A stretch of DNA of 49,933 bases from Polymyxa betae A26-41 (GCA_003693705.1 RBZT01000713.1:1-49933), one strand, 5' to 3'. Counted from the stretch's first letter, positions 24,665-37,479 are shown. The notes: generated by a model from the letters alone, not told the origin. A program made the numbers and translations.

Positions 24665-27600
24665 TCATGATCGTGGCGATGGAGCGGCGGCCATAGGCCC
24701 GTTGTTAAACTGATCGAATACACGCATGCTCTCCTGTTTCTGCATCTTGATTAACTCGTTCAGAATCTGATTCTTGTCGCTATCTTTGAGATTGAGGCGG
24801 TTCAGCATGGAGGCTGGGTGATCGGACAGAATCACACCGTCGGCGTTGCAATACGCCTCGACATTGGCGACGCAGATATCACAGGCTTTGATCCTTTTGG
24901 TACCACGTAGCTCCTTGATTTTCTGGGTGCTGCAATCTGGACAAACGATGGCACCGCACATGGCGCACAGCCCCTAAAATTTAGAAAAGAAAAGTTAGAG
25001 TCTGCAAGTTCAAAATGAGAAACTAAAAACGCAGATTAACAACCTTTCGTCGTCTGACTTTAGAGAAGGGCTTGAAACAGATGGTACAAGCATCAATCGC
25101 ACTATCAGCAGGTGGAAGAGTTCCTTTCTCGGCGATCATGGTGACACTATCCACCCATCCTTTTCGTTCTGACGACCTATGGGCTACTAGAGTACGGGCG
25201 ATCGTATTCAGCCAGAGCGATTTCTGCTGAGGATTATCAGCAATCACAATGAACTCTTTGCGTGGTGATCGGATCTGGAACGCGTTTGTGAGCTTCTTAT
25301 CCAATATCCCTGTACAAACATTTTACTAACAAATCCGCCAGATCTGGAACAAAGAATGGAACGAACATGAAAAAAAAGACTAGAATCGCAAAAACCCACA
25401 TACTTGAATCATTATCTGGGATATCTTCAACCATACAAATCCCAAGATGAAGAACCTGATGACATTTAACATAATCGCCGTATAGCAGCGCGTCGTTGAA
25501 CAATATGAACAGATATTTGTTCAGCTTGCCACTGGAGCTCAGCTTCGAAAGTTGGCCCTAATCGAACAGATTGAACATGATGATCAATCAGAAAGCAAGG
25601 GCGTTCAAATACCTGGCCAACAAATTCCCGCCCGCGCTTGATCAGTTTGTAATCCGGGGCCCAATTGTTACAAACTTCACGAAGTTTCTCGCAATTGATG
25701 TTGACGCGAACCTAAATGTGAGATCGTTTGTCAGAATAGCAAAATCAAAGACCAAAACGGAAACCATACTGCGATTTTGGCAGTATCAGCGACATGAATG
25801 ATAGTACGACAGAATGAATCGGCATCGACTTGGTTGGCAAGCAACGAGTTCTTGATATCTTTCAGCCATTTTTCTTCCAAGAACCTACCCCTATGGGAAA
25901 GAATGGCGATCAGCAATAGTGTGAGAGTAACGAAAAGCAAACAGTAAGAAGAAAGCTGAAATCAAAACAGAAGAGGTACCTGTTGATTTCGTTCTGGAGT
26001 GCTTCACGGAACGACGAGTTCGGAGCATCGATATGATCCGATTCGAAATTATATGAGAATGTCATCCGAGCCAGATGATCAATAAAGGCAATGAATTCTT
26101 TCAGGAATCCTAGACTCATGTAAAAAAGAAAGTACACCCTGAGCCAGTAAAAAACATTTGCGCAGACGATTCGCTCAATATCAGCAAATGAGAACGAAAA
26201 AACATGATGGTAGCTCAAAGTTTGCGAAACAAGCTCGGAAAAGCGAAAGAGAAAGTGCAAATTCGGAAGAGCAGACCTAAGCGTACAGCAGAGATAGCAC
26301 CATATTCCATGGCTTCCAAACACATGAAAATGACGTCTCTTCTTTTTGCCACATACACAATTGTACTGATCGAAGCAATATAACGAGCCCAAGACACCTA
26401 TTGCAATTTAGAAAACCATGTCGATTTTTGAAGTGATACCTCAAATAATCCGGCACAAATCGTCCACGATTTGCATTTCTGCAGACGGTTGGAGACCGAA
26501 TATCGCGGATTGTGTAAGAGACCACGAGCACGTCGACACATATTGCTCACTTCAGCGCGAATTTCGGCTCCAGCATACTGAACTGGAAGCATCGTGATAC
26601 GTCGAGAATGCTCGCGGGCCTATTCATAGCAATCAGCAAAACCTGATGTTGAAGAAACCGAATATATCACCTGTCGTTGAATGGTCCAGATATTAGCAAG
26701 GCCACCATGATCTGGGCTGTCGAGTTTCGATATTAAGATCGAATCATAATATTGCTCGAGACGCCATAAATCGAATGTTGCATGATCAGGTGGATCATTT
26801 GCGAATAGCGGGAACAACGTTTGTAGCCATGCTAGTTTTGACTGAAAGAAAAAGAGATTAAGTTCCAAAAGATAGAAGCTCAAGTACGAAATGCAGAAGA
26901 GCCAAAAAAGCGAACAACATTCAAAACTTATAAGAGAGTGCAATGAGAATCTCGTACAGTGGGCTTCGGCCTTTCGCCAGACGCTTGTTTGAGCATTCCA
27001 GCGCCGTGAATGGAATCGTTCAGATCAACAACGCCTTCAGCAATGCGCCATGCCGTGTAGAAATCGCGAAAAACTTTTTGATTATCGCGAACGTAGGCTC
27101 GCGCTACAGCTCTTAGCAGATTCGATATACCGAGACGCAGCTCGCGCTGCATTTCCCCATCGCTGATGTCAACGTCTTCATCTACATCAAGCTCCAATGG
27201 AACATAAAATCCTGTGCGACGAATCAGAATCGTGAATAGATAGGCTACATTGATTGAAGAACAAACTGAGCAAAACGGGCAATTCGCAGTGAAAATAGTC
27301 TAAACTGACCAAGATTGCCTTTATACATGTCTCGAATAGCATCAAGTAGATCCATGCCATGAAAATCAGTTCGATCAAAGAAGGCAGTAAGGATAGCCGC
27401 ATGAGCATGGGATGTCAAGAACCCGACCGAGCTGTATCTACCGGTTGAGATCAGGAACCGGCCCACATCGTCTCTATGTCCAAAAATCAGGGTTGGCTAA
27501 TCATTGAAAGTAGCATTTGAAAAAATAATTTGCCAGGATCCGATCAGTATTCATTATTTGTTCAAATATCAAGCGATTGTGAGTATAAGAAAAACTGATC

Positions 27601-36600: not shown

Positions 36601-37479
36601 TCATATCTGAAATACCTAGAAAGAGGCATAAGAACTTGCAGAAGGCATGGAAATATTTATGTACAAATAAAAAACATAACGGTTTTGCAGCTCGTTCATT
36701 ACAGAAGATACTGGATCTTCGGGCATTAAACGTTCTGATATTATCGCAGAACGAAAAAAGGCAAAACGAACTTTGTGCCAAAATTTCAAACATAGCAGGA
36801 AAAATCCCAACCAGAATATTGATAGGGAAGAACGGTTAACACAGAAACATATAGACGTCCGAAACAAAAATATCGTGAAAGACTGAAGAAAGCAATCATT
36901 TTCAAAAATTCGTGAAATACCTTGCTGTTGCTGTCCGTTACAACGATATACATTCTCACGCTTGACAACAAGTATGGTGTTTCCTTCGTCATACAGCGTC
37001 ACTTCCATCGACTGTGGCCCATCTGGGTTATCCTAAATTAAATTGTCAGGAACTATTTTTGGGAAACAAAAAACCTCTTAAGTCCCAAGCAAAATTCAAC
37101 AAAATCTGAGAAGTAATGGAGCTTGAAAAACCAGAAAGGTTGGAAATCTTGATGCTGGGTGGGAAAACGAGTTGTCATGGGATATTCGAAGACGCGCAAA
37201 ATGATGAGATTTCAGGAGTTTGATATACAGAGCCTGTGCTGGTAAGCACAATGCTTCTGTAGATGAGAAACGAAACCTTGAAGACTAATCGAGGATTCAT
37301 AAAGAGAAACGGGTATAGAGAAAGGTATTATCTCTATCTGGTACCAGTTCGGCAGGGGTATTGAGCCTAGCGCGCCGATATATGCCGAGGCGGTGGACGG
37401 CCGTCTCTGTCTCGGACGCTCCGTCGACTGAGCCGGCAGCATCAGCGGCGTAGCGAACCCAGACATCGACACCGGCCAT
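24665..37479 (-). CDS. Multi-exon unconventional myosin with IQ, CH, MABP, DCB/HUS, Sec7, HDS1, PH and FYVE domains (myosin-ArfGEF fusion)
   Basis: Start MAGVDVWVR (37479). Motor motifs [79 protein letters not shown] (~33000). CH (32100-32620). Three MABP repeats (30310-31015). HUS FYNFDND (~28335). Sec7 (26720-27720). HDS1 LFEVSW...CLEAMEY (26100-26450). PH (25200-25620). FYVE (24850-25090). Stop at 24665. In-phase GT-AG junctions were traced by hand from the neck to the stop. Confidence 0.85.

What the first reader, a model, noticed from the sequence alone, without database searches (positions are those of the whole stretch)
24665..37479. Giant myosin fused to a BIG/GBF-type ArfGEF with CH, MABP, PH and FYVE domains: a candidate motorised ArfGEF
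Seen: hand splicing gives in-phase GT-AG junctions with no forced stop from the myosin neck through IQ, CH, a Ser/Pro-rich linker, three MABP repeats, HUS ([12 protein letters not shown]), Sec7, HDS1, PH and FYVE. Established: DCB-HUS-Sec7-HDS is the architecture of BIG/GBF large ArfGEFs, MABP/PH/FYVE bind membranes, and CH often binds actin or microtubules. Inference: one polypeptide could move on actin, dock on endomembranes and activate or scaffold Arf. I do not recall a described myosin class with this tail, but could not search.
Basis: partly seen in the sequence, partly recalled or inferred. Interest (0 to 1): 0.9.

Follow-up and report, generated by a model that had tools for sequence, protein, structure and literature searches.

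The report
Myosin fused to a pseudo-ArfGEF tail
In the beet-root parasite Polymyxa betae and three relatives, one giant actin motor carries a membrane-traffic regulator (a BIG-type ArfGEF that has probably lost its catalytic activity) as its tail, a combination not found in the myosin or ArfGEF surveys searched, and its lever looks built to walk backwards like animal myosin VI.

Summary
Real. 37479-24665 (minus strand) is one 50-exon gene of 2694 aa. One spliced 8261-nt contig from a public run crosses converter, neck, CH, MABP, HUS and the start of Sec7 without a mismatch. Three independent orthologues (42-60% identity; two full length) keep the fusion. The genome matches Polymyxa betae. The motor motifs are intact and belong to a rhizarian myosin clade. 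The tail is a BIG-type HUS-Sec7-HDS1 unit with MABP in front and an FGD-type PH-FYVE behind; motor-less paralogues exist in this genome (noted earlier by the scan), one with a canonical Sec7 site. In the fusion the Sec7 active site is remodelled (glutamate finger E/E/D plus an acidic insert; groove residues polar), so 'Arf-binding scaffold' is likelier than 'GEF'. FYVE lacks the PI3P signature; DCB was not detected. New: the segment after the converter resembles myosin VI insert 2 in sequence and in a predicted structure (rmsd 3.4-3.9 A across the insert), predicting minus-end movement; the wider rhizarian clade shares it. No paper searched joins myosin and Sec7. New variant of a known kind; interest 0.75.

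The parts
24665..37479 (-). Whole gene, 50 exons, 2694 aa: myosin motor - insert-2-like segment - neck - CH - linker - 3 MABP repeats - HUS - Sec7 (remodelled) - HDS1 - PH - FYVE-like
   Evidence: Model; spliced contig; orthologues
36922..37479 (-). N-terminal extension (aa 1-82, exons 1-2), conserved in orthologues (51% and 29%); no Pfam match
33477..36613 (-). Myosin motor domain (aa 84-790); P-loop GESGAGKT at 36150-36127, switch I and II intact, acidic residue at the TEDS site in all three full motors
33238..33458 (-). Myosin VI insert-2-like segment after the converter (aa about 797-838): proline-containing break, then an amphipathic non-IQ helix
   Evidence: sequence; predicted structure of the orthologue
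32742..33237 (-). Basic helical neck with one weak IQ motif (33037-32975)
   Evidence: Pfam IQ E 0.0099, under cut-off; continuous helix in the model
32061..32619 (-). GAS2-type calponin homology domain (aa 956-1082)
   Evidence: Pfam CH E 1e-7 on orthologue; GAS2 9kbx E 1e-14
31084..32060 (-). Ser/Pro/Glu-rich linker, poorly conserved (26% and 19%); inferred fusion point
30316..31080 (-). Three MABP (MVB12-type beta-prism) repeats; 79% and 57% identical in orthologues, as conserved as the motor
   Evidence: Pfam PF10240
29047..30132 (-). Helical region in the position of DCB; no DCB match, language-model features point to the HUS/HDS armadillo family
   Evidence: lead only
28170..29046 (-). 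HUS domain with HUS box read as YNFDND
   Evidence: Pfam E 2.5e-18 on orthologue; alignment to 8ucq
26731..27809 (-). Sec7 domain with remodelled active site: FYVPLE at 27209-27192, acidic insert 27191-27126, polar helix H 27056-27006
25827..26562 (-). HDS1 region of BIG/Sec7 type
   Evidence: 8ucq residues 894-1019; family profile hits the genome's BIG but not its GBF-like genes here
25185..25711 (-). PH domain of the FGD5/FARP RhoGEF type, replacing HDS2-4
24854..25094 (-). FYVE-like zinc finger, eight Cys present, WxxD and R(R/K)HHCR signature absent
   Evidence: Pfam FYVE E 4e-5, under cut-off; alignment

Best explanation
A genuine single-chain myosin of plasmodiophorid-type rhizarians, made when a rhizarian motor-neck-CH myosin fused, in the Ser/Pro linker, with a duplicate of a lineage-specific MABP-HUS-Sec7-HDS1-PH-FYVE gene that itself derives from BIG. 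The motor is active on actin (motifs shown, activity inferred). The tail acts as a built-in cargo adaptor: MABP and PH hold acidic endomembranes, and the HUS-Sec7-HDS1 armadillo unit binds Arf/Arl or coat partners without catalysing nucleotide exchange (pseudo-GEF; inferred). The GAS2-type CH gives a second, ATP-independent grip on actin (inferred). The insert-2-like segment probably turns the lever so that cargo moves to the pointed end, as myosin VI does in endocytosis (predicted, about 0.5). Component odds: one polypeptide 0.96; Sec7 not a canonical GEF 0.7; minus-end 0.5.
For: Spliced contig across the junction. Full-length orthologues P0004 (2649 aa, intronless contig, 42%) and L016 (45 exons, 2714 aa, no stop, 60%, 34 of 44 introns at shared positions), partial L018. 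Motors form their own clade (support 100) inside a rhizarian clade that includes motor-CH myosins; neck plus CH align with these (E 1e-25 to 1e-10). Motor-less paralogue L014 has the same tail with canonical FRLPGEAQK and hydrophobic helix H. Sec7 66% identical between window and L016, close to the motor's 73%, while the finger is E/E/D and ARNO F190/M194 positions are E/D, T/E, E/A. Canonical BIG and GBF-like genes exist elsewhere in the genome, so the copy was free to change. Model of converter plus neck superimposes on myosin VI 705-830 (Z 10.3, rmsd 3.9) and 705-815 (rmsd 3.4); myosins I, II and V align only to the end of the converter or at rmsd 15-44 with the lever.
Against: No biochemistry or localisation. 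The window protein and P0004 keep a Glu in the finger position. The fold was predicted for the orthologue, not the window protein (32% identity in that region), and AlphaFold has seen myosin VI; the whole motor is closer to myosins XI and V among solved structures. FYVE lacks the PI3P motif, so the endosome target is a guess. A single-sequence Sec7 model was too poor to use (pLDDT 47).
Confidence: 0.6

Rival explanations
1. One reading: a motorised, catalytically active ArfGEF whose remodelled loop serves a divergent Arf/Arl substrate or is autoinhibited by the acidic insert.
For: Glu kept in register in two of three orthologues; GFxVP motif, insert length and helix G conserved across 42-60% divergent proteins; the genome has at least ten Arf-family loci.
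Against: Asp at the finger in L016; the Gln-Lys-Ile-Asp stretch is replaced; groove residues of helix H are polar in all three; in ARNO both the Glu156 finger and the hydrophobic groove are needed (PMC2823772).
Confidence: 0.22
2. One gene, two products: the full fusion is minor and a motor-less MABP-to-FYVE isoform from an internal start does most of the work.
For: In X3 and X5 the 3' contigs are 3-5 times deeper than the 5' ones (47.8 vs 9.6; 23.9 vs 8); motor-less paralogues show that such a tail works alone.
Against: Contig depth cannot show starts; 3' bias explains it; X1/X2 give one unbroken path; the breaks in X3 and X5 fall at different places; motor and tail are in one frame in four species.
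Confidence: 0.1
3. A tether rather than a transporter: a single-headed motor plus GAS2-type CH anchors an Arf-marked membrane to actin, direction being irrelevant.
For: No clear coiled coil or DCB dimerisation domain detected; one weak IQ; second actin-binding domain in the chain.
Against: TEDS site acidic and all motor motifs intact; cargo-induced dimerisation is known for myosin VI (own knowledge).
Confidence: 0.06
4. Two adjacent genes or an assembly chimera.
For: Short-read draft assembly; a contig across two genes does not prove one transcript.
Against: Every gap in the path is an in-frame GT-AG intron, no intergenic DNA is retained, and three other species have the same fusion, one as an intronless contig.
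Confidence: 0.02

Closest known systems
Rhizarian myosin clade with motor-neck-CH members (Bigelowiella natans P0053 and kin; probably myosin XXXVII of Krabberod et al., bioRxiv 10.1101/064030)
   Same: Motor groups inside this clade (support 100); same post-converter motif; neck and CH colinear.
   Different: None of the 120 listed motor relatives carries HUS, Sec7, MABP or FYVE; the fusions form their own subclade. Identity with class XXXVII is inferred from taxon pattern, not tested with the paper's sequences.
BIG/Sec7 large ArfGEFs
   Same: HUS-Sec7-HDS1 in order; best solved match is Sec7 8ucq; family profile matches this genome's BIG over the most stretches.
   Different: No DCB match, HDS2-4 replaced by PH-FYVE, MABP and a myosin in front, catalytic site remodelled. 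Pipaliya et al. 2019 (PMC6727740) describe BIG/GBF1 as architecturally conserved and mention no myosin or FYVE fusion.
Myosin VI
   Same: Converter end and following segment match myosin VI best in sequence and predicted fold, through insert 2.
   Different: Whole motor not closest to VI; tail unrelated; class VI is holozoan in Kollmar 2017 (PMC5583752). Direction untested.
Myosins with GTPase-regulator tails (myosin IX RhoGAP; Dictyostelium MyoM RhoGEF; own knowledge)
   Same: Motor and small-GTPase regulator in one chain.
   Different: Those act on Rho family GTPases; here the module is an Arf-family Sec7 unit and probably non-catalytic.
FGD/FARP RhoGEFs
   Same: PH (and FYVE) module closest to FGD5 and FARP1/2, including the end of the preceding helix.
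   Different: No DH domain; FYVE signature lost.

Membership tests
Myosin superfamily | Complete motor domain with P-loop, switch I, switch II, SH1, converter | tested here: met
   Pfam exon by exon, full 1-679 on orthologue, motifs
Myosin superfamily | Actin-activated ATPase and movement | not testable with these tools
   needs in vitro assay
Rhizarian myosin clade (XXXVII-like) | Motor groups with the rhizarian-specific clade | tested here: met
   quick and FastTree methods, careful search unfinished, no metazoan class VI row
Rhizarian myosin clade (XXXVII-like) | Clade is the one named XXXVII in the paper | not tested
   paper's sequences and figure not available
Myosin VI | Insert 2 after the converter redirecting the lever | tested here: met
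   as a predicted structural match on the orthologue:
Myosin VI | Motor domain groups with class VI | tested here: inconclusive
   PDB ranking puts XI and V first; RUN-tailed VI-like P0102 is sister to the clade at 84-95 support with few outgroups
Myosin VI | Class VI cargo-binding tail | tested here: not met
   no such Pfam match
Myosin VI | Minus-end movement | not testable with these tools
   needs polarity-marked gliding assay
BIG/GBF1 large ArfGEF | DCB domain | tested here: not met
   no Pfam DCB at E up to 5 or in the own-genome scan; a degenerate remnant is not excluded
BIG/GBF1 large ArfGEF | HUS domain | tested here: met
BIG/GBF1 large ArfGEF | Sec7 domain with FRLPGE glutamate finger and hydrophobic helix H | tested here: not met
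   domain present (E 1e-5) but motif FYVPLE/FYVPYE/FLVPLD, insert, polar helix H
BIG/GBF1 large ArfGEF | HDS1 | tested here: met
   BIG-type
BIG/GBF1 large ArfGEF | HDS2-HDS4 | tested here: not met
   PH-FYVE follow HDS1 directly
Canonical PI3P-binding FYVE | WxxD, R(R/K)HHCR and RVC motifs | tested here: not met
   motif definition from own knowledge
GAS2-type CH domain | CH fold with the SFFARDN motif | tested here: met

The most novel reading that the evidence does not exclude
A minus-end-directed myosin outside class VI that carries its own Arf-binding membrane module: the first motor-Sec7 fusion, and a sign that a whole rhizarian myosin clade has a myosin VI-type reverse gear (by descent or by convergence).
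Probability: 0.4. Interest if true: 0.9.

Novelty: new variant of a known kind. Interest (0 to 1): 0.75.

Why it matters
BIG/GBF1 proteins are held to be the architecturally fixed branch of the Sec7 family, and myosin VI the only pointed-end myosin. This gene challenges the first directly and offers a test of the second: a 900-residue motor-neck fragment in a polarity-marked gliding assay would show whether rhizarians have a second reverse motor lineage. The paralogue set in one genome (canonical BIG, motor-less chimera with an intact site, motor-less chimera with a degenerate site, myosin fusion) shows step by step how an enzyme of membrane traffic became a cargo adaptor. Cell biology of plasmodiophorids is almost unstudied. 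The score is held below 0.8 because odd myosin tails are common in protists (Kollmar 2017 counts 160 unclassified types) and function rests on prediction.

Tried and rejected
An ab initio Viterbi parse invented tiny exons and was replaced by the reading fixed with RNA joints. Two possible GC donors (27775, 27319) were rejected because orthologues keep the residues up to the GT donors. Homologue searches with the tail gave only the orthologues; the metagenome pattern scan found nothing; no named NCBI or UniRef protein with this architecture came back, so presence in Plasmodiophora brassicae or Spongospora is unknown. Alignment A1 of exon fragments was misaligned and not used. The single-sequence Sec7 fold was too weak. 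Spliced alignments to the canonical GEF loci were noisy; only the profile hits were used. The careful motor tree did not finish. PMC1170701 was not held, so the effect of Glu-to-Asp at the finger rests on own knowledge. Paper searches joining myosin and Sec7 with myosin classes, FYVE, Plasmodiophora or Rhizaria returned nothing; most subscription papers and CyMoBase could not be searched. The joined model was used only in local scripts. Loose-end letters have no reference and were not searched.

Full report
Source. The window's assembly has 27,085,814 bases in 1001 contigs; the published Polymyxa betae draft has 1001 contigs and 27,085,946 bp (PMC6328671). A fragment identical to the HUS exon is filed under Beta vulgaris, the host (KMS65479). 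I take the organism to be P. betae (Phytomyxea, Rhizaria).

Gene structure. Reading the minus strand gives 50 exons from ATG 37479 to TGA 24665, 49 GT-AG introns of 42-312 nt, 2694 aa and no internal stop. Six public runs hold 0.49-0.52 of the sampled words of 27900-33800, the share expected for spliced RNA (0.518). On 27785-33779, run X1 has one 8261-nt contig that skips the introns, has no mismatch and runs from the first Sec7 exon through HUS, MABP, CH and neck into the motor; its loose end is the next motor exon. X2 (same sample) repeats this; X3 and X5 (another study) show the same listed joints on shorter contigs. Offsets between contig and model are constant, and the unlaid ends leave 93 and 83 nt for UTRs. 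Contigs cannot show starts or poly(A) sites, so a shorter isoform is not excluded.

Conservation. The HUS exon retrieved three proteins out of 1.84 billion. They led to P0004, 2649 aa on an intronless 8124-nt JGI contig, 42% identical end to end with the same domain order; to L016, a genomic contig of 55% GC where a homology-guided parse gives 45 exons, 2714 aa, no stop, 60% identity and 34 of 44 introns at shared positions; and to L018, a partial copy running from motor through CH and MABP into the helical region. The species behind these three are not named in the tool output. Four species with the same frame rule out a chance join or an assembly error.

Motor. P-loop, switch I and switch II are intact and the TEDS site is acidic in all three full motors. 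The three form a clade with support 100 inside a 49-row clade that holds Bigelowiella and Amorphochlora myosins (quick method), probably the Rhizaria-specific myosin XXXVII of Krabberod et al. (not tested directly). Several members have motor-neck-CH; neck and CH of the fusion align with them, and a profile of the fusion CH scores them above the CH of the motor-less paralogue (4e-13 versus 7.5e-9). The CH therefore most likely came with the motor. It is of the GAS2 type.

A possible reverse gear. After the converter, plant XI and class II rows go straight into an IQ helix, whereas the fusion and the clade rows shown have a short helix, a proline-containing break and a non-IQ amphipathic helix. 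Among solved structures this stretch matches myosin VI first (E 1.3e-6, myosin Va close behind at 3.7e-6), although the whole motor ranks XI and V higher. AlphaFold2 on a 34-row alignment led by P0004 gave pLDDT mostly above 90 from the converter on. Foldseek's first 13 hits are myosin VI. VIA-align superimposes model residues 96-225 on myosin VI 705-830 (Z 10.3, rmsd 3.9) and 96-210 on 705-815 (rmsd 3.4), which covers insert 2; myosins I, II and V align only to residue about 170, or at rmsd 15-44 if the lever is included. Insert 2 is described as unique to myosin VI (PMC5762158), and class VI as the only minus-end class (PMC3942036). This is a prediction on the orthologue from a method trained on myosin VI; I put minus-end movement at about even odds.

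Tail. MABP (three repeats), HUS, Sec7, PH and FYVE are weak on single exons and clear on P0004. HUS and HDS1 align best to fungal Sec7 (8ucq, E 2.7e-10), and a family profile hits the genome's BIG gene (C675) at five stretches including HDS1 but the GBF-like genes only at HUS and Sec7. DCB is not detected. After HDS1 comes a PH of the FGD5/FARP type and a FYVE-like finger that lacks WxxD and R(R/K)HHCR. The same tail exists without a motor at C244 (MABP to FYVE, canonical FRLPGEAQK) and C709 (CH-MABP to FYVE, degenerate site), with an intron after the same R(R/N)RK in the finger; C920 has a related HUS, PH and FYVE. Earlier scan notes pointed me to these; I checked them here.

Sec7 active site. 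Against ARNO/cytohesin and the C244 paralogue, the finger reads FYVPLE, FYVPYE and FLVPLD, followed by an acidic insert of about 18-20 residues, and the helix-H positions F190 and M194 are E/D, T/E and E/A. Exchange in ARNO needs the Glu156 finger and burial of switch 1 in the hydrophobic groove (PMC2823772). Yet the domain is 66% identical between window and L016, near the motor's 73%. It is kept for something other than canonical catalysis; Arf/Arl or coat binding is my inference.

Mechanism. Shown: one chain, intact motor motifs, BIG-derived unit with a remodelled site, membrane-type domains on both sides. Inferred: the tail is a built-in adaptor that docks on acidic, Arf-marked membranes; the motor, helped by a second actin grip from CH, moves or holds them, possibly toward the pointed end. 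History inferred: BIG duplicated and swapped HDS2-4 for PH-FYVE and gained MABP; one copy fused to a motor-neck-CH myosin in the low-complexity linker and lost canonical catalysis.

Literature. Sec7 does not occur in the text of Kollmar and Muhlhausen 2017 or its held supplements nor in Sebe-Pedros 2014; myosin and FYVE do not occur in Pipaliya 2019; four full-text searches were empty. Figures, CyMoBase and subscription papers were out of reach, so 'undescribed' is likely, not proven.

Method note. Shared databases were searched exon by exon by reference or with stored orthologue ids; the search with the joined spliced protein was left out. The joined model was built and compared only in local scripts. 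Loose-end letters without a reference were not searched.

Verdict. Observation confirmed, interpretation partly supported; new variant of a known kind; interest 0.75.

Noticed in passing
window:20807-22258 minus: CRESS-DNA virus Rep-like remnant in two pieces (HUH motifs in 21965-22258, SF3 helicase PF00910 E 5e-7 in 20807-21958, acidic tail). Observed only.
   Followed up: partly
window:18728-19250: Decayed copy (68% identity) of the last two exons of the myosin gene about 6 kb downstream; 17112-17264 also repeats at 23308-23461.
   Followed up: partly
window:39364-40179 plus: Intronless GC-rich ORF with three Myb repeats (Pfam E 2e-23).
   Followed up: partly
run X3, contig of 5449 nt: Extends about 840 nt further 3' than the contigs of the other runs (3013 versus 2151-2188 nt beyond 27785): longer 3' UTR or read-through, unexplained.
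   Followed up: no
window:31642 and 32964: Short matches to another contig in all four runs, with loose ends; probably chance or host sequence, letters have no reference and were left out.
   Followed up: no
L014 (G000:C244:54800-59260), L015 (G000:C709:203490-208830), L044 (G000:C920): Motor-less family of BIG-derived Sec7 proteins ending in PH-FYVE; C244 has a canonical catalytic motif, C709 has CH plus a degenerate motif (FRMPEN). The architecture is itself absent from the ArfGEF survey read.
   Followed up: partly
P0020-P0067 and L033 (G000:C617): The insert-2-like motif is shared across the rhizarian clade, including a second P. betae myosin at C617; tails vary (PH, LRR, CH, Ras/Roc in P0063).
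   Followed up: partly
L016 flanks: The orthologue lies between a nucleoside transporter and a PH-bearing kinase; no synteny with the window's neighbours.
   Followed up: yes
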